Below, in pieces: positions 8,329 to 62,903 of a DNA stretch of 64,000 bases (the stretch's first letter is position 1; each line of letters begins with the position of its first letter). A model generated the notes under the pieces. That model had not been told where the DNA came from. It did no database searches and was given only the letters and a program-made list of their open reading frames with translations. A program made the translations under genes and the position numbers. Origin of the DNA: Diadema antillarum. Taxonomy: Eukaryota. Where the stretch lies: positions 1,612,001 through 1,676,000 of the forward strand of contig NW_027271030.1 of the NCBI RefSeq assembly GCF_040938485.1, in the 5' to 3' direction.

Positions 8329-9661
8329 TTACGAAGGGGTTATTCTAAACTTGTACATTTCCTCGTAGTACGGCATTTCTTTCTCGGCAACCTCCCTGAT
8401 ATCCTTTGTCGCCCCGTCAAGAGAAGCGGAAGTGGGAGAAGGTTTGAAACAAGTACTCTTAAAGGCATTGGCAAACCACACATTATAGCGTGGAGCCTCA
8501 AGTACATTTGAACAGACATTCTGCCACGTACGGACCACATCGGATGAGGCGTCCCAAGTTACGTAATCCTCTGAGTACGGAATACCCAGTGCCCGGAAGA
8601 GCAGTGGAAGTAATGTTGCCGGATCATCCACGAGTTCATCGATGTCGACAATGACCGGGTTGTCATCGACGTTTTCTCGAATGTGGCACCATAATTCGTG
8701 GATTGCCTTGAAAAAGTAAAGCGTTCCTTCCTCGGGTGCCGGTGCATAATTCATAACATTGAAGGTTTCTGGGTCCGGTTTCGTCATATTCCATAGTACT
8801 TGATCGGGATCTGATCCCTCTACTGTTTTCAGCAGTGTTTTCCTAAAAGATTTGTACGTCTTCACAGGATGTCGTATGAGGAAGCAATGTCGAAAACCAC
8901 TGGATGGATCAGGCAGGTACTTGTATCGGCTTGGTGGCATGCCGAAGGCCATGTCTTTGATGAAGACAAATTTCTTGGTTGGAGGAATCGAGTCGAATAT
9001 TTGCTTCAGTTTAGCAGGTCTATGGATATGAGGATAGAGATAATGATTGATGAGTTTTCTAGTTTCTATATATTTTTGTGTACGCCTTGAATTTCTAATA
9101 TTATTATGAAGTAATACACCTCAGACTGTGGGTACAAAGAATGGAACAATCATTTTCTTTGAGTGTAATTGTAAAGTCGTGTAAGTTGTGCAAACATTTG
9201 AGATTGTTTTAGCATAAGCGGACCAAGTTGTAATACAAAACATTTTTCCCATTCCTATATTTCTACTTTCAAAAATGTCCCTTAATGTACATTAGGCTCT
9301 ACACAATTCTGAGACAAGTAGGACATACACCTACTATCATACGGTAATGATTTGTTTGTAAACATGACACTTACGACAGCAGGTCGAGCTTGAAGGACTT
9401 TGTGTCAACACCCAAATTTAAGTTCTTTGCTGTTTCAACGTAGATCTCCTCGTTACCATCAATATCAGCAGGAAGCGGGACGGAAAGATAACCTTCACAA
9501 ATTTCTCTGGCAATCCTGGAAATAACGTACGGCTCCAGCCAGACTTCTGCACCGTCAACAAAACTCAAGCATTTTGTCATTCCTGTCGACACCGACCGGG
9601 GAGAGCACCACATGATAACCCGTGCTGGTTCGTCGTATGTAGCTTCTGCGTCAGTGGCCAT
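8329..9661 (-). CDS. ST-1: sulfotransferase-fold (P-loop) protein, 325 aa, 2 coding exons
   Basis: Exon A 9661-9375 ends TC|GTAAGT. Exon B 9019-8329 starts after CATAG|A. The phase-2 join reads LLS-PAKLKQIFDS. CDS is 978 nt with no stops. Motifs WCSPRSVST and FLIRHPVK are present. Family assignment is from remembered motifs, not a search. Confidence 0.9.
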
Positions 9662-9909: not shown

Positions 9910-10590
9910 ACATCACAAAGCGAGACATCGTGCGCTGCTTCGTATACCATCACTATGTGAAAAGAATGTAACAATTTCTAACAAAAAGCTATGACGTCAC
10001 ATATCACTTCTGACATCGCGCACTGGTTTGTAACGTCAGTCTGCGAAATGTTACCATTTCGAACACAATTGTGACATAACAAAGCAATGATGACATCGTG
10101 CGCTGCTTCGTAACGTCATTCTGTGAAATGTTACAATTTCGAACAAAACAATTGTGACATAATAAAGCAATGGTGACATCGTGCGCTGCTTCAAAACGTC
10201 ACTCTGTGAAATGTTACCATTACGAACAAAACAATTGTGACATAACAAAGCAATGATGACATCGCGCACTGCTTCGTAACGTCACTCTGTGAAATGTTAC
10301 CATTTCGAACAATACAATTGTGACATAACAAAGCAATGATGACATCGCGCACTGCTCTGTGAAATGTTACAATTTCGAATAAAACAATTGTGACATAACA
10401 AAGCACTTCTGACATCGCGCACTGCTCCGAAACGTCACTCTATGAAATGTACAATTTCGAGAAAAAAAAACAACAATTGTGACATAACAAAGCAATGATG
10501 ACATTGTGTGCTGCTTCGTAACGTCACTCTGTGAATTGTAACAATTTCGCACAAGAAAAAAGCGACATAAATAAGCAATACTGACATCGT
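9910..10590. repeat. ~83-bp minisatellite, about 8 units
   Basis: GTGACATAA starts at 10071, 10154, 10237, 10320, 10390 and 10479. Confidence 0.9.
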
Positions 10591-10722
10591 TGGCTGCAGC
10601 TGCGTACGGTCAGTGTAGGATCCCTCCGCAACATCACATCAACCACACGACTTCTCGCCTATCACTTTTCCCTTCTTTTATTAAAGTATCAGACCCGAAA
10701 TATGTATATAGAGATATATATA

Positions 10723-24840: not shown

Positions 24841-24990
24841 NNNNNNNNNNNNNNNNNNNNNNNNNNNNNNNNNNNNNNNNNNNNNNNNNNNNNNNNNNNN
24901 NNNNNNNNNNNNNNNNNNNNNNNNNNNNNNNNNNNNNNNNNNNNNNNNNNNNNNNNNNNNNNNNNNNNNNNNNNNNNNNNNNNNNNNNNN
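24841..24990. other. Assembly gap
   Basis: Run of N. Confidence 1.
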
Positions 24991-25142: not shown

Positions 25143-25280
25143 NNNNNNNNNNNNNNNNNNNNNNNNNNNNNNNNNNNNNNNNNNNNNNNNNNNNNNNNNN
25201 NNNNNNNNNNNNNNNNNNNNNNNNNNNNNNNNNNNNNNNNNNNNNNNNNNNNNNNNNNNNNNNNNNNNNNNNNNNNNNNN
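25143..25280. other. Assembly gap
   Basis: Run of N. Confidence 1.
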
Positions 25281-27971: not shown

Positions 27972-29589
27972 TTACGGAGGGGCTATTCTAAACCTGTGCA
28001 TTTCCTCGTAGTACGGCATTTCCATATCGGCAACCTCCCTGATATCCTTTGTCGCCCCGTCAAGGGAAGTGGAAGTAGAGGAAGATTTAAAACAAGTACT
28101 CTTAAAGGCGTCAGCAAACCACATATTATAGCGCGGAGCGTCGAGGACGTTCGAACAGAAACTTTGCCACGTGCGGACCACATCGGATGAGGCGTCCCAA
28201 GTTACGTAATCCTCGGAGTATGGGATACCTAGTGCGCGGAAGAGCAGTGGAAGTAAGGTTGCCGGATCTTCCATGAGTTCATCGATGTCGACAATGACCG
28301 GGTCGTTATCGACGTTTTCTCGAATGTGGCACCACAATTCGTGGATTTCCCTGAAAAAGTAAAGCGTTCCTTCCTCCGGTGGCTGTGCATAATCCATAAC
28401 ATTGAAGTTTTCTAGATCCGGTTTCGGCATACCCTGTGGTAGATCCTTGGGATCCACTCCTTCTACTGATTTCAGCAATATCTTCCGAAAGGATTTGTAC
28501 ACCTTCACAGGATGACGTATGAGGAAGCAATGTCGAAAACCACTGGATGGATCAGGCAGGTACTTGTATCGGCTTGGTGGCATGCCAAAGGCCATGTCTT
28601 TGATGAAGACAAATTTAGTGGTTTGAGGAATCGAGTCGAATATTTGCTTCAGTCTAACAGGTCTGTGGATAAGGACAGAAGTAATTACAGTGATGTATCT
28701 TATTTGACTTCTCATACACGAATGAAAATGAATTGAATCCTTGGTTTAAGATGTTGGCTAGATAGAATTTAAAAACAAATCATGGAGATCAACTACATTT
28801 CACCGCATTCTAATGGACATGTGTATACCATGGACTTTACTTAAATGGGAATTGTAATTCAGATCAAGAGTTCAAGTTTACTTGTCATAGCTCTTTAGGT
28901 TTTCCAAGCCATTTACATTGTTTGAGTCTAGGAAGAAAGGCAAGTTGCAAGTATTCACCCTCATTCCTATTCTTGATTCATTTTTTTTTCCTCTTTAATA
29001 ATTATTATACTGACTGTAATAAACAAGTGCTACGAAAACACTGTTTATACAGACAGTGACACGGCATTTGCTCCTACGACAATTATTCCGGTCTTATTTT
29101 CTCTAAAAGGACCTAGTGTTAGAGTTAGGGATATGATAGTGGTTCAGGTTTACTTTGATATGAGGATTAAGATTAGGGTTTAGGTTATGTTTGTAGATGT
29201 AATTTATGTTTGGCTTAGCGTGCAGATATTTCATGGAAGCTATTGTCGCAGGAGCTAATGTCATGGAACCCATACAGACATAGTACGTTTCGAAAACAGA
29301 AGACTTACGACAATAGATCGAGTTTGAAGTTCTCTGTGTCACCTCCCATATTCAAGTTTTTCGCTGCATCCAGGTAAACCTCTTCGTTACCATCAATTTC
29401 AAGAGGAAGCGGATCGGAATGATATAGTTCCCTGGCCATCCTGGAAAAGACGTACGGCTCTAGCCAGATTTCGGCGCCGTCAACGAAGCTCATGCATTTT
29501 GTCATTGCTGTCGACACAGAGCGGGGAACGCACCACATGATGATGCGTGCGTTGTTGTCACCTCCTGCCATGTTCGCGTCACATGCCAT
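27972..29589 (-). CDS. ST-3: sulfotransferase-fold protein paralog, 323 aa
   Basis: Exon A 29589-29309, exon B 28662-27972, same GT-AG phase-2 intron. CDS 972 nt, open. Confidence 0.9.
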
Positions 29590-30232: not shown

Positions 30233-30401
30233 NNNNNNNNNNNNNNNNNNNNNNNNNNNNNNNNNNNNNNNNNNNNNNNNNNNNNNNNNNNNNNNNNNNN
30301 NNNNNNNNNNNNNNNNNNNNNNNNNNNNNNNNNNNNNNNNNNNNNNNNNNNNNNNNNNNNNNNNNNNNNNNNNNNNNNNNNNNNNNNNNNNNNNNNNNNN
30401 N
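30233..30401. other. Assembly gap
   Basis: Run of N. Confidence 1.
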
Positions 30402-33973: not shown

Positions 33974-35269
33974 CTAAGGGGTTATTCTAAACTTGTACAT
34001 TTCCTCGTAGTACGGCATTTCCTTCTCTGCAATATCCCTGATATCCTTTGTCACCCCGTCAAGAGAAGCGGAAGTAGAGGAAGGTTTGAAACAAGTACTC
34101 TTAAAGGCGTTGGCAAACCACAGTTTATAGCGTGGAGCCTCGAGGACGTTCGAACAGACACTGTGCCACTTCAGGACCACATCGGATGAGGCGTCCCAAG
34201 TTAGGTAATCCTCGGAGTACGGGATACCGAGTGCGCGGAAGAGCAGTGGAAGTATGGTTGCCGGATCCTCCATGAGTTCATCGATATCGACAATGACCGG
34301 GTTGTTATCGACGTTTTCTCGAATGTGGCACCACAATTCGTGGATTTCCCTGAAAAAGTAAAACGTTCCTTCCTCCGGTGCCGGTGCAAAATCCATAACA
34401 TCAAAGTTTTCTGGGTCTGGTTTCGGCATACCCTGTGGTAGATCCTTGGGATCCACTCCTTCTACTGATTTCAGCAATGTCTTCCGAAAGGATTTGTACG
34501 CCTTCACAGGATGACGTATGAGGAAGCAATGTCGAAAACCACTGGATGGATCAGGCAGGTACTTGTATCGGCTTGGTGGCATACCAAAGGCCATGTCTTT
34601 GACGAAGACAAATTTCGTGGTGGGAGGAATCGAGTCGAATATTTGCTTCAGTCTAACAGGTCTGTGGATGAGGACAAAAGATATCATAGACATGCTTTGT
34701 TATTGTTGTTTTTTATTGACTTCTCAAATAGGATAAACAAAACCATTAAGCAATTGTAATTTAGATCAAGAGTTCAAGTTTACTTGGCATAGCTCTTTAC
34801 GTTTTGCAAGCCATTGACATTGTTTGAGTCTAGGAGGAAAGGCAAGTCGTAAGTATTCGTCCTCACTCCTATTTTTAATTATATTGTTTCTTTATTTCAT
34901 TACTGAGTATATTAAACAAATTTGACACAAACACTGCCAAACAGACATGGTACGTTTAATAAAACATAACACTTACGACAATAGATCGAGTTTGAAGTTC
35001 TGTGTGTCACCTCCGAAATTCAAATTTTTTGCTGCATCCAGGTAAGCCTCTTCGTTACCATCAAATTCAGCAGGAAGCGAGTCGGAGTCGGAATTATATA
35101 GTTTACGGAATTCTCTGGCCATCCTGGAAATGACGTATGACTCCAGCCAGATTTCGGCCCCGTCAACGAAGCTCATGCATTTTGTCATTGCTGTCGACAC
35201 CGAGCGGGGAACGCACCACATGATGACTCGTGCGCGCCCGTCTTCTGCCGTTCTTGGGTCAGTGGCCAT
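33974..35269 (-). CDS. ST-4: sulfotransferase-fold protein paralog, 326 aa
   Basis: Exon A 35269-34977 (MATDPRT...), exon B 34661-33974. CDS 981 nt, open. Confidence 0.9.
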
Positions 35270-35673
35270 TTTATTCCTTCTGCAAATGGTGGTCATCGGG
35301 TTAAAGACGATATTGTTCCAGAGGAAAGAAAGTGATTGAAACGAAATGAAAAAGAGCTAACATCCACCCGACAAGAGTTGAGTTGCAAACATGGTTCTTC
35401 AAAAGATCAAATAATTACAATTTTAAGAATCTAACCTCCTCTTACATTTTTGCAGTTCGAAAAAAAAAAGTTCAGTTACACAACCATTTATAAAACATAT
35501 AGTGGCCTATCAGATAGATTACTTCTTAGTCGTTGACGAACGACACTTCTTCATCACTCTACAAAGTTTCTCTCCTTATAAATTACTTTTTATCAAGAAG
35601 CAAAACTATCTTATGGATGTAAGAGTAGCCTTTCCTATTCGACTGATCTCGTACCATGCGCTATGATGCTTAC

Positions 35674-54100: not shown

Positions 54101-55189
54101 CTCATCTGTTTGTGTCATTTATTTTGTGTTCTTGCATACTTTGTTTTCATTGTTATGCAGGAATAAAACAAAGCCAAATCAAATCAATTTTTTTCTAACT
54201 TTTAAAGAATGTTACTGTGGCAAGCCGCCGTTAACGTCACCTTGATATGGTGAAGAGCATAGTATGCCATAATTCTATACCATTATCATGTCATGTCCAA
54301 TATTGATGAAGAGTGATTTTCTTCTGTTTGTTTGGTTGACATCGGAAGGCAACGAGGAAAACGGAATAGAAAAAGCGTCATTACAAGAGCTTCCATCTAT
54401 ATGGATTTGCCATGATATCATTGTGTAAGGTTTAGGGGTTGTTCTATAAATTATTTTCATCGATAAGTCTGAACTCATCATATGCCTTCTAATGGCTACA
54501 TGTGATATTGATGGCTCGTCTGCCTGAGGGATGTGACGTTCGGTTACTAATTCAAACAGTTAAATAATGCAAAGTTTGTATGCTCTGGGATCACATTGGC
54601 CACAACATAAGGAACTATATTGTAATTGTATTTCAGTATGATCCTCTGTGTGACATACCACAAGACAATGCTTATTCCCATCAAGGTCGAATAGTTCGTA
54701 ATTGACAAGTGTACCCGTTAGCATATCTTGCATATCTGACTCATGAAACATGATTCATCTCAAAGATAAAGAGCAGGCTAAGTCTATTTAGTCCAGTCAA
54801 TCTAGCGATTTTTAGGGGGTAACCCACCACTAATTGCAACAGTAGGAATTTCACTGCAGAGCAAGTCGTTGAGCGGGGCAAAATAGTAAAATTTGCATAA
54901 TATGCAAATTAGCACCTGAAATGAGAGGAAACTGACAGATCTCAGCTTCCCGTTATCCAATTTTAAAGATTTAAATGTATAAACTTATATTTTGTAGGTT
55001 AATGAACACGATAGATGCCTTTTCGAATTGGTCGTACAAAAATAATTTACATAAAATGCAAATTAGCGGTAACTGTAAGAGTACATTCATAACAACAGTA
55101 CTCACGTTGGCATAATGTACGTTTTGCATATGGGGACGCGGGGTTGAGGGGGTAACTTTGGGCGCCTCCCAAGGGGCCGCTTTAAATGT

Positions 55190-57440
55190 GCACCACTTTT
55201 TACTATATAAGTATTGTAAAGCAATGTCTCCTGTATTGATTACATTGCATTTCTTGAAAACAAAAATACCCTTGCTATAAGGCATGATCGAATTTTGACA
55301 GTATGTACTTTTGGAACATATATATTCGCGTTATATGATATTATATGTTTTCTATATTGCCAAGAGGATAAAGGGCATTTCGGGGGCACACGCCACAGGG
55401 TCGCCCTTCAATAAGCACCCTCTTTATTGTGTAGATCTTGTAAAGCAAATCTTCTTCTATCATATTCATGACTTTTCATATATATAAGAGTGTATTTGCT
55501 GTATTGCTGGACCTACATTTAAAACCATTCACGCTAGAACAACTGCATTTGCGTTGCTAATATCCGTATCTTGTCATAAGGGGCGTGAGCGTAGGTGTAA
55601 ATTTAGACACCTCCCCAGGGATTACCTTTGCATGTCCACCTTTTTGACAATGTAGTTATTGTAGAGCAATGTTTCCTCTACTAATTAGTTGCATTTTTGG
55701 GGGGGAAGCAAAAGTGCCTTTGCTATACGGCACGATGGAATTTCGAAAACATGTACGTTTGGAACATATATATATTCGCGTTATATGATACTATATGTTT
55801 TCTATCTTGCCGTGAGGGTGGAGTATTTTTGGCACATCCCACAGGGTTGCCGTTTGATGCGCACCCTCTTAAGTGTATAGATCTTGTAAAGTTAAGTTTC
55901 TTCTATCATTTTCATAATTTGTCATCGATGAAAATTGTATTTGATGTATTGCCGGAACTACTTTTACAACCATTCACGCTAGAACAACGGTATTTGCGTT
56001 GCTAATATCTGTGCTTTGTAATAAGGGGGCGTGAGCGTAGATGTGAATTTGGACACTTCCCAAGGGATTACTTTTGAATGTTCACCCTTTTGACAATATA
56101 GTTATTGTAGAGCAATGTCTCCTCTATTAATCAGTTGCATTTCTTGGAAACAAAAGTGCCTTTACTATTCAGCACGATGGAATTTTGAAAACATGTACGT
56201 TTGGAACATATATATATTCGCGTTGTATGATATTATATGTTTTCTAAGTTGCCGTGAGGGTTGAATATTTTTGGCACATCCCACAGGGTTGCCATTTAAT
56301 GTGCATCCTCTTCACTGTATAGATCTTGTAAAGTTAAGCTTCTTCTATCATTTCCATGACTTTTCATTGATAAATAGTGTATTTGCTGTATTGCCGGGAC
56401 TACTTTTAAAACCATCCATGCTAGAACAACGGTGTTTGCGTTGCTAATATCTGTGTTTTGTCTTAAGGGTGCGTGAGCGTAGGTGTAATTTTGGACCATT
56501 CCCAAGGGATTGTCCTTTAATGTTCACCCTTTTGACAATATGGATATCGTTAAGGAATGTCTCCTCTATTAACTACAATGTATTTTTGAAAACAAAAGTG
56601 CCCATGCTGCATGGCATGATCGAAGTTTGAAACATGTACGTTTGGAACATATAGTATATTCGCGTTAATAATATTCAATGTTTTCTATATTGCCGTGAGG
56701 GTGGGGTACTTTGGGGCACATCCCACAGGATTGGAATTTAATGTGCATCCTCTCACTGAATAGATATTGTGAAGCAATGCTTCTTCTATCATTTCCACGA
56801 CATTCATCGATATAAAAGCATGTAGCTGTATTGCCGGAACTACTTCTAAGATCATGCACCAAAGAACGTCAGTATTTGCGTTCATAGTATCCGTGTGTTG
56901 TAATTACGGGGCTTGAGCGGAGGTGTAATTTTGGACACTTCCCAAGGGATTGCTTTGAAATGTTCACCCTTTTGACAATAAAGTTAAGGTAGAGCAATGT
57001 TTTCTTCTTTTGATTATATTGCATTTCTTTAAAACAATAGGGCACTTGCTGTACAACCGTTGGAAAATTGGAACATATTCGTGCTAAATGATAGTGCATG
57101 TTTCCTATATTGCCCTGGGGGTTGGATGATTTGAACACATCCCACTCGGTGGCCTTTGATTGTGCACCCCTTTGACTATATGAATATTGTAAAGCAGTGT
57201 CTCTACCATTTAAAAATCATGAAAAGTACATTGTAAAGTGTTTTTATTTACAACCCGGCAAAACGACTTTCTACGTGCATGTACAACTGAATTTGCTTTG
57301 GCATATAATGCTGTTTTGGGACCACGAAGGTCAAGGTATGGGTGATTTGGGCACTTCCCAAGGGCTTGCGTTTAAATGTCCAACTTTTTGACGATATAGA
57401 TATTGTAAAGCAACGTCTCCTGTATTACCTGAATTGCATT
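55190..57440. repeat. ~440-bp tandem array (5 units; more diverged units at 58930-59440)
   Basis: TTGGAACATA at 55311, 55759, 56201, 56642 and 57068. Confidence 0.85.
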
Positions 57441-57449
57441 TTACCAAAA

Positions 57450-58925
57450 TAAAAGAGTATTGTTAGTTTGAATGGCCATGTGTCCAGTTCACAGCCTATA
57501 ACTTGTGGGGTACCGCAAGGATCCCTTTTAGGTCCTTTATTGTTTATTCTTTATATGAATGACTTTCGCAGTTCGTCCTCTCTGCTCTATTTTCTACTTT
57601 TTGCCGATGACACCAGTATTTTTTATTCAAATCGAAACCCTCATGTTTTACTGAATACCGTAAATACTGAATTAAAATCAGTATCTAAGTGGATTCAGGC
57701 TAATAAATTGTCATTGAATTTGACCAAGACAAAATTTATGGTTTTTAGCAATATAATCAATATTTTACCGGGTAAGTTGGTTGTAAACGACGTAGAATTG
57801 AACCAGGTGGAACATATAAAATTCCTTGGTCTCTATATTGATTGTAAGTTGACATGGAAAGTTCATGTTGATTCTTTGCGTAAATTATTATCAAAAAATG
57901 TAGGTGTTATGTATAAGTTAAAACAGTTTTTTCCTAAACATGTTCTGCATTCATTGTATTCTACTCTATTTTTGCCTTATATAGGTTATGGAATCCTGGC
58001 ATGGGGAAACTGCTGTACAACTAGACTTAATTCTTTATTATTGATACAGAAAAGAGCTATACGGATAATTAACTTCGCCACATTTTTCGAACACACTAAT
58101 GTCTTATTCTTTTCCAGTAGAACACTTAAGATCCAGGATTTATATCATTTTAATATCGGGTCATTTATGTATCAATTAAACTCAGGTGGTCTCCCTGATG
58201 TGTTTTCTTCGATGTTTGTCAAAAATACTGAAGTTCATTCTTACCCTACTAGACAAAAAGATTCTTTTCATCTTTCTCCTGTACGAACCGTATCTGCTTT
58301 AAAAACAATAACCACTACAGGACCTAAATTTTGGAATGAGTTGGATAGAGAAATAATCCAATCTCAGTCTCTTTATTCATTTAAACATAAACTTAAACTA
58401 GTTTTTCTGAATTCATATCTATAGCTATTCTTCAATCCTCCTCGATATTCTCTGTTCATACTTCACATTACTGACATTATCGATTATGTAACATGTGCCT
58501 CGCTCGTGATTTCTGTATTATCTCCTGAACTTCCTTTGTACACATTTGGTATCTCTGCTATTGTACACTGCATCTGACTTATACCTCGCTCGGGTGATCA
58601 CGCAACACTCAAGAAGTCTGTGCCGCGGACATTGTTGTCATTGTTTTCTTTTTTCTTTTTCTTTTTACTTTTTGGCGTTTATATTTCTCCAATTCAGAAA
58701 TTGTCATTCCTTTAATTACATACCCAAGTAAGAAATAATCTCACATCCGCATCTGGGAATCTACACCCTACAAGCAATGCTTCTATGTAGATTCCTCATA
58801 TTTCACATGTTTTATTGTCTTTTAAGCTGTACGTGACAATTCATCCAGGCTTTTGTATCGTGATGTCTATGTTTTATGTATTTGTTGAAATGTGGAATAT
58901 GGAACAATAAAAAACAAAAACAAAC
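57450..58925 (+). mobile_element. 5'-truncated CR1/L2-like LINE with an uninterrupted 318-aa RT C-terminal ORF
   Basis: ORF 57468-58424 with GVPQGSLLGP and FADDT, then a 3' UTR and A-rich tail. Confidence 0.9.
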
Positions 58926-59779: not shown

Positions 59780-60620
59780 ACCTTTTGCATATTATGCAAA
59801 TGAGGCCCAGATTATGTACATGGAATTGTTTGCATCGCACTAAGTGACATTGGAAACATAGGTTTCATTACTTTCGGTGTTCCAATCTGAAACCTAGAAG
59901 CATAGTTTTCATGGAAACACTGTATTTTTATCATTATTGGAGCTAATTTGCATATTATGCAAATGAGGCCCAGAATATGTACATGGAAATGTTTGCATCG
60001 CACTAACTTACATTGCAAACATATGTTTCAACACTTTGGGTGTTCCAATCTGAAACCTAGAAGCATAGTTTTCATGGAAACACTGTATTTTCATCATTAT
60101 TAGAGCTAATTTGCATATTATGCATATGAGGCCCAGAATATGTACATGGACATGTTTGCATCGCACTAACTGACATTGAAAACATACGTTTCAACACTTT
60201 GGGTGTTCCAATGTGAAACCTAGAAGCATAGTTTTCATGGAAACACTGTATTTTCATCATTATTAGAGCTAATTTGCATATTATGCATATGAGGCCCAGA
60301 ATATGTACATGGACATGTTTGCATCGCACTAACTGACATTGAAAACATACGTTTCAACACTTTCGGTGTTTCAATCTGAAACCTAGAAGTATAGTTTTCA
60401 TGGAAACACTGTATTTTTATCATTATGGGGAGCTAATTTGCATATTATGCAAATGAGGCCCAGATCATGTCCATGGAAATGTTTGCATCGCACTAGCTGA
60501 CATTGTAAACATAGATTAAAATACTTTCGGTTTTCCAATCTGAAACCTAGAAGCACAGTTTTCATGGAAACACTGTATTTTTATTAGTATGGGAGCTAAT
60601 TTGCATATTATGCAAATTTA
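59780..60620. repeat. 163-bp tandem array, about 5 units
   Basis: AACCTAGAAG at 59891, 60054, 60217, 60380 and 60544. Confidence 0.9.
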
Positions 60621-61099: not shown

Positions 61100-62903
61100 T
61101 TACGAAGGGGTTATTCTAAACTTGTACATTTCCTCGTAGTAGGGCATTTCCTTCTCGGCAACCTCCTTGATATCCTTTGTCGCCCCGTCAAGAGAAGCGG
61201 AAGTGGAGGAAGGTTTGAAACAAGTACTCTTAAAAGCGCTGGCAAACCACATGGCATAGCGCGGAGCTTCAAGCACGTTCGAACAGACACTTTGCCACTT
61301 ACGGACCACATCCGATGAGGCGTCCCAAGTTACGTAATCCTCGGAGTACGGGATACCCAGTGCTCGGAAGAGCAGTGGAAGTAAGGTTGCCGGATACTCC
61401 ATGAGTTCATCGATGTCGACAATGACCGGGTTGTTATCAACATTTTCTCGAAGGTGGCACCATAATTCGTGCATTCCCTTGAAAAAGAAGAGGGTTCCCT
61501 CCTCCGGTGGCGGTGCATAATCCATAACATTGAAGGTTTGTGGGTCCGCTTTCGGGAAACCCCATGGTAGGTCCTCGGGATCCAATCCTTCTACAGCTTT
61601 CAGCACTGTCTTCCGGAAGGATTTGTACGTCTTCACAGGATGTCGTATGAGGAAGCAATGCCGAAAACCACTGGATGGATCAGGCAGGTACTGGTATCGG
61701 CTTGGTGGCATACCAAAGGCCATGTCTTTGATGAAGACAAATTTCTTGGTGGGATGAATTGAGTCGAATTTTTGCTTCAGTTTAACAGGTCTGTGGATAG
61801 GGACAGAAATACATTAATTAATTAAACTTGTAGTTATATCTTCTCTTCTAAACCTATAGATAAAAGTAATATTCTTTAGATTTGGTCAGTGAAATGTTGA
61901 CAAAACTTGAAAAATTAATAAACTCTTAACTCACCGACTCTAAAATAATCTAACAAAAAAGTACTACATGTATACATGTATGCTCGTGTAAAACCATAAG
62001 CATTTACTTACAAGATAATTGTAAGTTAGACAAAGAGCTCACAGTCACTTGGCATACCCCTTTAAGTTTGGCAGGAGTTTGCCTTCTGTTTCAGTCTTGG
62101 AGGAACTTAAAGGGATCGATGGTATAGTATTGGTTGAGACTAAGATTCAGCTTTTAACTTCTTGCACAATACTTAGAAAACATTCCATGATGTTTTATGG
62201 CATGCAATTCTAAGAGGAATTCAAAGTATATTTAATGAAAATGGGTTTTGAAATGACTGAGATATCCATGGATAAAGTAAAATTAAAGTAAAAATGATCA
62301 TGATAAAACGCAGGTCCGACTATTCATTCGGATTGCTTTGTTTTAGATATCTCAAATTGTAGCAAATAAACGTTGAATCTCTCTTAAAATTACAAGCTCT
62401 TTCATATTTCATATGAGGTTTCTCATTATCTCGGAAAAATATTTGAGAAACCTGAAGCCCCATCTAAACTTAAACTATACCATTGATTTAATGTTTGTCT
62501 ACTAGGAAGTATTTTAATCTCGTATATCAAAATTCCAATCCAAACTTAATGACATATTGATACAAACATTATCACACACTTAATACACATTTGAAGAGCA
62601 CAACACTTACGACAACAGATCGAGTTTGAAGTTCTTTATGTCACTGCCCAAATTCAAATCTTTAACTGTCTCCAGGTAAATCTCCTCGTTACCGTCAATA
62701 TCAGTGGGAAGTGGGTCGGAGTCGGGATGATATATTTTATGAACGTCTTTTGCGATCTTAGAAATGACGTACGGCTCGAGCCAGATTTCGGCCTCGTCAA
62801 CGAAGCTCATGCATTTTGTCATCGCTGTCGATACCGATCGGGGAGAGCACCACATGATGACTCGTGCTGGTTCGTCGCCGGCAGTTTTTGCGTCGGTGGC
62901 CAT
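61100..62903 (-). CDS. ST-6: sulfotransferase-fold protein paralog, 327 aa
   Basis: Exon A 62903-62611, exon B 61790-61100. CDS 984 nt, open. Confidence 0.9.
62111..62487. mobile_element. TTAA-type MITE in the ST-6 coding intron
   Basis: Reverse-orientation homolog of 3674-4057. Confidence 0.65.

What the first reader, a model, noticed from the sequence alone, without database searches (positions are those of the whole stretch)
9534..9599. Active site looks TPST/CurM-type (Arg...Glu at +21), not classical cytosolic SULT
Seen: in all six paralogs an invariant Glu (WLEPY; WLESY in ST-4) lies exactly 21 residues after the Arg of PRSVST. The segment that may correspond to the KTH/KSH His of cytosolic SULTs reads invariant KDM. 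Knowledge, from memory: tyrosylprotein sulfotransferase TPST2 (R78/E99) and the curacin CurM sulfotransferase (R39/E60) use an Arg-Glu pair with this spacing. Inference: these could be soluble animal enzymes with TPST/polyketide-type chemistry, acting on peptides or beta-hydroxy acyl groups.
Basis: partly seen in the sequence, partly recalled or inferred. Interest (0 to 1): 0.7.

Follow-up and report, generated by a model that had tools for sequence, protein, structure and literature searches.

The report
Sea-urchin sulfotransferases with Arg–Glu active site
Six neighbouring sea-urchin genes encode soluble sulfate-transferring enzymes of a little-studied family (Pfam Sulfotransfer_5). Their catalytic residues match those of tyrosine-sulfating and polyketide-sulfating enzymes, not the classical drug- and hormone-sulfating ones, and what they sulfate is unknown.

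Summary
The window is Diadema antillarum DNA and carries six intact two-exon genes of 321-327 aa. All six have Arg in PRSVST and Glu exactly 21 residues later (WLEPY; WLESY in the fourth gene), and all six have KDM. In gene a the Arg-to-Glu stretch is 9598..9533 (-), one base off the stated span.

The Glu is not a chance match:
- It is kept in 107 of 116 cluster representatives, all named ones echinoderm.
- It is Glu (16) or Asp (2) in 18 distant members from an annelid, fungi and bacteria.

A family profile hits only two solved structures, the curacin CurM (E 2e-11) and olefin-synthase (E 1e-8) sulfotransferase domains. The Arg-to-Glu stretch aligns without gaps, and Lys and the 3'-phosphate Arg/Ser also align. 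A confident model (pLDDT 92) is closest to these two and to the TPSTs (Z 12.7-13.7). Other sulfotransferases score 11.4 or less.

The proteins belong to Pfam PF19798, not to the TPST, CurM or cytosolic SULT families. So the active-site reading is supported. The suggested substrates (peptides, beta-hydroxyacyl groups) have no support. I could not measure the Glu-to-PAPS distance and found no RNA evidence.

The genome holds well over 100 such exons, some in duplicated haplotigs. This scan had already noted similar arrays elsewhere in this genome.

The parts
9375..9661 (-). Gene a, exon 1 (codons 1-95 plus 2 bases). It carries the 5'-phosphosulfate-binding loop PRSVST (9601-9584), Arg22 (9598-9596) and Glu43 (9535-9533, in WLEPY 9541-9527).
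8329..9019 (-). Gene a, exon 2 with the stop codon. It carries Lys117-Asp-Met (8958-8950), His140 (8889-8887), the 3'-phosphate motif I-R145-H-P (8877-8866) and Ser153 (8850-8848).
   Evidence: exon 2 is 100% identical to the annotated protein P0001
18813..20417 (-). Gene b (323 aa): exon 1 20417-20137, exon 2 19503-18813; R23, E44 (WLEPY), KDM.
27972..29589 (-). Gene c (323 aa): exon 1 29589-29309, exon 2 28662-27972; WLEPY, KDM.
33974..35296 (-). Gene d (326 aa from the conserved ATG at 35269; an in-frame upstream ATG at 35296 would add 9 aa): exon 1 ends at 34977, exon 2 34661-33974; WLESY, KDM.
38365..39921 (+). Gene e (321 aa), the only one on the plus strand: exon 1 38365-38642, exon 2 39234-39921; WLEPY, KDM.
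61100..62903 (-). Gene f (327 aa): exon 1 62903-62611, exon 2 61790-61100; WLEPY, KDM.

Best explanation
Each of the six genes encodes a cytosolic, stand-alone PAPS-dependent sulfotransferase of about 325 aa from Pfam family PF19798 (Sulfotransfer_5). PAPS binding: the loop after strand 1 (P-R22-S-V-S25-T26) would hold the 5'-phosphosulfate, and R145 with S153 (I-R-H-P-x5-S) would hold the 3'-phosphate. Catalysis (inferred by homology): Glu43, the first residue after strand 2, would take the proton from the acceptor hydroxyl. Arg22 and Lys117 would stabilise the transferring sulfuryl group and the PAP leaving group, as described for TPST2 (Arg78/Glu99/Lys158). No His base is involved, because the position two residues after the Lys is Met. 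Acceptor: unknown. My best guess is small hydroxylated metabolites. The guess rests on three points: the proteins are soluble, the family is hugely expanded in tandem arrays in echinoderms, and the paralogs differ mostly in two segments (residues 46-77 and 158-200) beside the catalytic residues. Shown here: the gene models, the motifs, their conservation, homology to the CurM/OLS ST domains, and the nearest folds. Inferred: PAPS use, the Glu as base, and the kind of acceptor.
For: Gene models and intactness. Purifying selection on every pair of paralogs (dN/dS 0.24-0.54), strongest over residues 13-45 (0.14). Pfam PF19798 above threshold; all 18 members of A3 match it, best E 3e-64. Profile A2 against the PDB gives CurM ST 4gbm at E 2.3e-11 and OLS ST 4gox at E 1.3e-8, with pRslSt..wfEpY over pRsgSt..ppElh without gaps, vfvKdm over lvdKsp, and RHP..S over RHP..S. 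The spacings match CurM closely: R to E 21 in both, E to K 74 against 73, K to R 28 in both, R to S 8 in both. The AF2 model has pLDDT 91.6 and pTM 0.91. Nearest folds are OLS ST Z 13.7, CurM ST 13.5, TPST1 13.3, TPST2 13.0 and tick TPST 12.9; the next are Teg12 11.4, SULT7A1 11.1, 3-OST about 10.7 and SULT1/2 about 10.2. The exhaustive search gives the same order. The first, weaker model also gives it. In the model R22, E43, K117 and R145 all lie within 0-3 residues of the C-terminal ends of strands 14-19, 39-42, 114-119 and 139-144, which is the edge of the sheet that carries the 5'-PSB loop and the 3'-phosphate motif. Conservation of R22, E43, K117, R145 and S153. Literature: TPST2 and tick TPST triads with Ala-mutant data (PMC10951654); SslST R12 and E33, also 21 apart and both essential (PMC11143521).
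Against: There is no biochemical evidence for any PF19798 member: paper searches found none. The tools give no model coordinates, so I could not measure the distance from Glu43 to the PAPS site. No RNA evidence: the only runs holding the locus are genomic contigs that span the intron. About 7% of family representatives lack the Glu (K, Q, A, G or H), so some members either work otherwise or are inactive. TPSTs are not detected by sequence: the PDB profile search at E up to 10 lists none, and hhalign against the Diadema TPST ORF gives only a weak C-terminal match. The gap in Z between the top group and other sulfotransferases is only 1.3-1.8. His140 is also highly conserved (109 of 116).
Confidence: 0.7

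Rival explanations
1. The proteins are active PAPS sulfotransferases, but Glu43 is structural (for example it caps helix 44-59 or braces the 5'-PSB loop). The proton acceptor would then be another conserved residue such as His140, His146 or Tyr45.
For: His140 is conserved in 109 of 116 representatives and Tyr/Phe45 in 111 of 116. CurM has a His two residues after its Glu (ppElH). The paper on SslST reads its E33 as a substrate-contact residue.
Against: His140 begins strand 139-144, at the opposite end of the strand from R145 and so away from that edge of the sheet. It is Asn in some bacterial members and Tyr in CurM. His146 varies: H 65, D 20, N 20. Phe often replaces Tyr45. The Glu is the residue that aligns with the catalytic Glu of TPST2 and tick TPST.
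Confidence: 0.1
2. They carry out CurM-like chemistry: they sulfate a beta-hydroxyacyl thioester or free 3-hydroxy acid, possibly to activate it for elimination. This is part of the first reader's suggestion.
For: The only solved structures detectable by sequence are the CurM and OLS ST domains, and the motif spacings are nearly identical. A bacterial PF13469 enzyme sulfates 3-hydroxy fatty acids (PMC13449962).
Against: The genes stand alone. No ACP, thioesterase or PKS ORF lies in the window; the other large ORFs are retroelement remains. Identity to CurM ST is only 14-16%. The segments that would form the acceptor pocket are the least conserved.
Confidence: 0.08
3. They are cytosolic protein or peptide tyrosine sulfotransferases, that is, they have a TPST-like function.
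For: The catalytic triad matches TPST and the TPSTs are among the nearest folds (Z 12.7-13.3). Peptide sulfotransferases such as SslST show the same +21 spacing.
Against: P0001 has no PF13469 match. It has no membrane anchor, whereas Diadema has a separate canonical TPST with one. By sequence the family is closer to CurM/OLS than to TPST. More than 100 copies are hard to reconcile with a housekeeping protein-modification role.
Confidence: 0.05
4. They are non-catalytic sulfotransferase-fold proteins (PAPS/PAP or ligand binders), or a gene family decaying after amplification.
For: No expression evidence was obtained. Some genomic copies carry stop codons. Some family members have lost Arg and/or Glu, for example P0028 with Gln and Lys.
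Against: All six genes are intact. All PAPS-binding and catalytic positions are kept, dN/dS is 0.24-0.54, and it is 0.14 across the Arg-to-Glu segment. Orthologues exist in all five echinoderm classes.
Confidence: 0.05

Closest known systems
CurM and olefin-synthase (OLS) sulfotransferase domains of cyanobacterial polyketide synthases (PDB 4gbm, 4gox)
   Same: These are the only solved structures detected by sequence (E 2.3e-11 and 1.3e-8). Arg, Glu(+21), Lys, R-H-P and Ser align, and the spacings are nearly identical. They are also the best structural matches (Z 13.5-13.7, rmsd 3.8-4.2 A over 226-238 residues).
   Different: Those are domains inside PKS modules, next to an ACP and a thioesterase, and they act on ACP-bound 3-hydroxyacyl chains. 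The urchin proteins are stand-alone products of two-exon animal genes with no PKS neighbour, share 14-16% identity, and have Tyr/Phe where CurM has His two residues after the Glu.
Tyrosylprotein sulfotransferases TPST1/TPST2 and tick TPST (PDB 5wri, 3ap1-3, 8w5z)
   Same: The same Arg/Glu(+21)/Lys catalytic set (TPST2 78/99/158, tick 74/95/154; PMC10951654), K-D-x after strand 3 (KDP in the Diadema TPST ORF; KDM here), and near-top fold similarity (Z 12.7-13.3).
   Different: TPSTs are Golgi type II membrane proteins of Pfam PF13469 that sulfate protein tyrosines. The urchin proteins have no anchor and no PF13469 match, their Lys lies at +92 to +97 instead of +80, and they show no significant sequence similarity to TPST.
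Pfam PF19798 (Sulfotransfer_5), including the N-terminal domain of plant 'branched-chain-amino-acid aminotransferase-like' proteins
   Same: This is the family the proteins belong to. The HMM score is above threshold, there is continuous homology to annelid, fungal and bacterial members, and the same R, E/D, K, R and S positions are kept. Atlas clusters occur in Mucoromycota, Cnidaria, plants, green algae and bacteria.
   Different: The echinoderm branch is divergent: the Pfam model aligns only its last third, at 31.8 bits. The proteins are about 60-80 residues longer than the bacterial members, are not fused to aminotransferase or rhodanese domains, and are amplified to well over 100 exon matches in one genome. 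I found no paper that characterises any member.
Classical cytosolic sulfotransferases (SULT1/SULT2, Pfam PF00685), including the sea-urchin pigment-cell gene sult1c2
   Same: Soluble, PAPS-type fold with a 5'-PSB loop and the 3'-PB Arg..Ser (8 apart). Structural Z is about 10.
   Different: No PF00685 match. Arg replaces the 5'-PSB Lys, Met sits where the catalytic His would be, and there is no C-terminal GxxGxxK. The pigment-cell marker 'sult' of S. purpuratus is sult1c2, a different family (PMC7455242).

Membership tests
Pfam PF19798 Sulfotransfer_5 | Score against the family HMM above the curated cut-off (23.2 bits) | tested here: met
   P0001 scores 31.8 bits (E 1.2e-7), but only residues 218-317 align; P0009 scores 40.5 and P0013 45.9. 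All 18 members of A3 match, best E 3.1e-64.
Pfam PF19798 Sulfotransfer_5 | Full-length homology to typical (non-echinoderm) members with the same conserved positions | tested here: met
   Profile A2 retrieves annelid, fungal and bacterial PF19798 proteins. In alignment A3, R22, R145 and S153 are invariant, K117 is nearly so, and position 43 is E in 16 and D in 2 of 18.
Tyrosylprotein sulfotransferase (TPST, PF13469) | Match to the PF13469 HMM or detectable sequence similarity to TPSTs | tested here: not met
   P0001 has no PF13469 hit at E up to 1. No TPST chain appears in the PDB profile search at E up to 10. hhalign against the Diadema TPST ORF gives probability 5%.
Tyrosylprotein sulfotransferase (TPST, PF13469) | N-terminal type II membrane anchor (Golgi lumenal enzyme) | tested here: not met
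   The longest hydrophobic run in the first 40 residues is 7, and strand 1 starts at residue 14. The Diadema TPST ORF has a long hydrophobic segment before its domain.
Tyrosylprotein sulfotransferase (TPST, PF13469) | Catalytic Arg, Glu at +21, and Lys after strand 3 | tested here: met
   R22/E43/K117 are present in all six genes. Offsets from the structural alignments put R22 on TPST2 residue 78 and tick TPST residue 74. The triad is named in PMC10951654.
Tyrosylprotein sulfotransferase (TPST, PF13469) | Sulfates tyrosine in proteins or peptides | not testable with these tools
   Needs an enzyme assay.
CurM/OLS-type PKS sulfotransferase domain | Significant sequence homology with the catalytic and PAPS-binding residues aligned | tested here: met
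   4gbm E 2.3e-11 and 4gox E 1.3e-8. Arg, Glu, Lys, RHP and Ser are in register.
CurM/OLS-type PKS sulfotransferase domain | Embedded in a PKS module between ACP and thioesterase | tested here: not met
   The genes are stand-alone 321-327-aa two-exon genes. The other ORFs of 140 aa or more in the window are retroelement remains or have no family.
Cytosolic SULT (PF00685) | PF00685 match; 5'-PSB Lys (PKSGTT); catalytic His two residues after the strand-3 Lys; C-terminal GxxGxxK | tested here: not met
   There is no PF00685 hit, the loop reads PRSVST with Arg, the strand-3 motif is K-D-M, and no gene has G..G..K. That K117 matches the SULT Lys is inferred from the fold, not aligned residue by residue.

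The most novel reading that the evidence does not exclude
PF19798 enzymes are the missing sulfotransferases behind the sulfated secondary metabolites typical of echinoderms (sulfated sterols and steroid or triterpene glycosides, sulfated polyketide pigments). On this reading they form a phylum-wide, tandemly amplified toolbox of cytosolic Arg/Glu-type enzymes, and the two variable segments (residues 46-77 and 158-200) set acceptor specificity. The family would then parallel the vertebrate SULT1/2 system but use different catalytic residues.
Probability: 0.3. Interest if true: 0.7.

Novelty: new member of a known kind. Interest (0 to 1): 0.45.

Why it matters
PF19798 is a large sulfotransferase family found in bacteria, fungi, plants, cnidarians and echinoderms, and I found no paper that characterises any member. 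This work shows that its catalytic residues match the Arg/Glu/Lys set of TPST and CurM-ST. It also shows that echinoderms have amplified the family to dozens or more genes per genome. Together these give a concrete mutagenesis plan and a defined set of candidate genes for the unknown enzymes that make echinoderm sulfated metabolites. For annotation, it warns that counts of animal 'SULT' genes based on PF00685 alone miss a second and larger soluble sulfotransferase repertoire in these genomes.

Tried and rejected
- **Single-sequence and shallow-profile PDB searches.** Exon 1 alone and P0001 alone gave nothing. The 13-sequence profile reached CurM ST only over the C-terminal half. The 67-sequence profile was needed to align the Arg-to-Glu segment.
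- **hhalign of A2 against the Diadema TPST ORF.** Only a weak C-terminal match, probability 5%. Equivalence with TPST therefore rests on fold matches and identical offsets, not on sequence.
- **RNA evidence.** Laid on the locus, they are genomic contigs that cross the intron and show no splice joints. Expression is untested.
- **The CurM-ST paper** (McCarthy 2012) is not held, by DOI or by PMC id. A text search for CurM with E60 found nothing.
- **Pigment-cell link.** I asked whether the sea-urchin pigment-cell 'sult' belongs to this family. It is sult1c2, a classical SULT, so the link was dropped.
- **Genomic context of a bacterial member** (P0263, Sneathiella): no informative neighbours.
- **Other searches.** NCBIfam has no model for these proteins. 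Searches for the plant fusion proteins, for echinoderm sulfotransferase expansions and for S. purpuratus LOC identifiers found nothing relevant.
- **Glu43-to-PAPS distance.** Not measured, because the structure tool returns no coordinates.

Full report
**What is there.** The finding lies in exon 1 of a minus-strand gene. A six-frame scan finds the motif PRSVST six times in the window, each followed 21 residues after the Arg by Glu: WLEPY five times, and WLESY in the copy at 35209. Each copy is a two-exon gene with a conserved phase-2 intron (TC|gtaagt ... cag|A), giving intact proteins of 321-327 aa. In gene a, Arg22 is 9598-9596, Glu43 is 9535-9533 and K-D-M is 8958-8950. Protein names returned for exon 2 identify the organism as the sea urchin Diadema antillarum. 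The annotated 325-aa protein P0001 uses the same splice and differs from the window copy at two exon-1 residues.

**Selection.** The six proteins are 79-90% identical, with pairwise dN/dS of 0.24-0.54. Constraint is strongest across residues 13-45, which contain the Arg and the Glu (dN/dS 0.14). It is weakest in residues 46-77 (0.47) and 158-200 (0.63).

**Family.**
- Pfam places the proteins in PF19798 (Sulfotransfer_5), just above threshold and only over the C-terminal third. PF00685 and, for P0001, PF13469 do not match.
- A profile search of 1.8 billion cluster representatives finds 1,906 relatives.
- All named members among 20 sampled clusters are echinoderms: sea urchins, a brittle star, sea cucumbers, sea stars and a feather star.
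- A word-indexed profile search reaches an annelid, fungi and a bacterium, all PF19798.
- The ESM Atlas shows PF19798 clusters in Mucoromycota, Cnidaria, plants (fused to an aminotransferase domain), green algae (fused to rhodanese) and bacteria.
- The Diadema assembly holds at least 128 exon-2 and at least 150 exon-1 matches. The same array appears on contigs C142, C164 (identical) and C34 (98%), so haplotig redundancy inflates these counts. Two further paralogs lie just upstream of the window on C142.
- I found no paper that characterises a PF19798 protein.

**Is the Glu more than chance?**
- Among 116 full-length representatives, the counts are Arg22 110, Glu43 107, Lys117 111, Arg145 115 and Ser153 109.
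- The Arg-to-Glu spacing is exactly 21 in 92 of the 103 that have both residues.
- In the 67-sequence alignment A2 (mean column identity 28%), the only invariant positions are R22, E43, K117, R145, W251 and Y314.
- In 18 distant members, position 43 is Glu in 16 and Asp in 2.
- All 11 distinct exon-1 sequences from 30 further Diadema loci have the Glu.
- About 7% of representatives lack it. One of them (P0028) has also lost the Arg.

**Relation to solved enzymes, by sequence.** Profile A2 hits only two PDB sequences significantly: CurM ST (4gbm, E 2.3e-11) and the olefin-synthase ST (4gox, E 1.3e-8). The printed alignment puts pRslSt...wfEpY over pRsgSt...ppElh with no gap. It also puts the Lys of vfvKdm over the Lys of lvdKsp, and RHP...S over RHP...S. 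The spacings are nearly identical to CurM: R to E 21 in both, E to K 74 against 73, K to R 28 in both, and R to S 8 in both.

**Relation to solved enzymes, by structure.** A first model was moderate (pLDDT 75). The model built on A2 is confident (pLDDT 91.6, pTM 0.91).
- Nearest folds are OLS ST (Z 13.7, rmsd 3.8 A over 226 residues), CurM ST (13.5), TPST1 (13.3), TPST2 (13.0) and tick TPST (12.9).
- After these come Teg12 (11.4), SULT7A1 (11.1), the heparan-sulfate enzymes (about 10.5) and the cytosolic SULTs (about 10).
- Alignment start points (model 13 = CurM 30; model 11 = TPST2 67; model 12 = tick TPST 64) place R22 on CurM 39, TPST2 78 and tick TPST 74.
- PMC10951654 names Arg78/Glu99/Lys158 of TPST2 and Arg74/Glu95/Lys154 of tick TPST as catalytic, with Ala-mutant support.
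- Diadema's own TPST ORF shows R, E at +21, K at +80 (NKDP) and R at +105. These are the human TPST2 offsets 78/99/158/183, with R183 numbered from my own recollection; the ORF also has an N-terminal hydrophobic segment that the window's proteins lack.
- SslST, a lanthipeptide sulfotransferase, has essential R12 and E33, again 21 apart.

**Mechanism.** In the model, R22, E43, K117 and R145 each sit at or just after the C-terminal end of one of four parallel strands (14-19, 39-42, 114-119, 139-144). This is the edge of the sheet that carries the 5'-PSB loop and the 3'-phosphate motif. I therefore read Glu43 as the general base, with Arg22 and Lys117 as the electrophilic helpers and R145/S153 binding the 3'-phosphate. 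Met119 sits where cytosolic SULTs would have their His; that last equivalence is inferred from the fold. I could not measure the Glu-to-PAPS distance, because the tools return no coordinates. The catalytic role of CurM Glu60 comes from my memory of a paper the library does not hold.

**What is not supported.** Nothing indicates the acceptor. The window has no ACP, thioesterase or PKS gene; its other large ORFs are retroelement remains. The proteins are not TPSTs by sequence or topology. The sea-urchin pigment-cell sulfotransferase is a classical SULT, sult1c2. No RNA evidence could be obtained.

**Earlier notes and verdict.** Earlier notes of this scan describe similar tandem arrays elsewhere in this genome. 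One follow-up reached the same general conclusion: a real, conserved array with unknown substrate and unknown expression. The proteins are divergent members of a known but uncharacterised Pfam family. The substrate proposal remains open.

Noticed in passing
G000 contig C142 about 1,598,000-1,611,500 (just upstream of window base 1); also contigs C164 and C34: The array continues beyond the window with at least two more paralogs. The whole array is present three times in the assembly: C164 is identical and C34 is about 98% identical. This points to unpurged haplotigs, so genome-wide copy counts are inflated.
   Followed up: partly
Proteins P0028, P0049, P0058, P0071, P0117, P0132, P0143 (family representatives, not in the window): About 7% of family representatives have lost the Glu (K, A, Q, Q, G, H, K). 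P0028 of Diadema setosum has also replaced the Arg with Gln. These may be pseudoenzymes, or members with another mechanism. P0042 of D. antillarum has Asp.
   Followed up: partly
window 46946-50746 (-) and 57468-58424 (+): Retrotransposon remains lie between genes e and f: ORFs with integrase core (rve, below cut-off) and reverse transcriptase (RVT_1) domains. They were only described, not assembled or repaired.
   Followed up: partly
window 9924-10597: A tandem repeat (units of 83 and 166 bases, about 4 copies, 79-90% matches) begins about 260 bases upstream of the start codon of gene a, in its presumptive promoter region.
   Followed up: no
window 55180-57054 and 59784-60617: Two further satellite-like arrays: 442 bases x 4.2 copies and 163 bases x 5.1 copies.
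   Followed up: no
window 35296-35270 (-): Gene d has an in-frame ATG 27 bases upstream of the conserved MATD start. It would add 9 residues. The annotated relative P0003 starts at the conserved ATG.
   Followed up: no
window 24841-24990, 25143-25280, 30233-30401: Three runs of N (457 bases in all) lie between genes b/c and c/d.
   Followed up: no
L001 1261-2142 (G000 contig C33) and L002 (C1772): Diadema has a canonical TPST orthologue: a large ORF of 293 aa (its ends were not defined) with PF13469 at E 2.6e-55, an N-terminal hydrophobic segment, and R/E/K/R at the human TPST2 offsets.
   Followed up: partly
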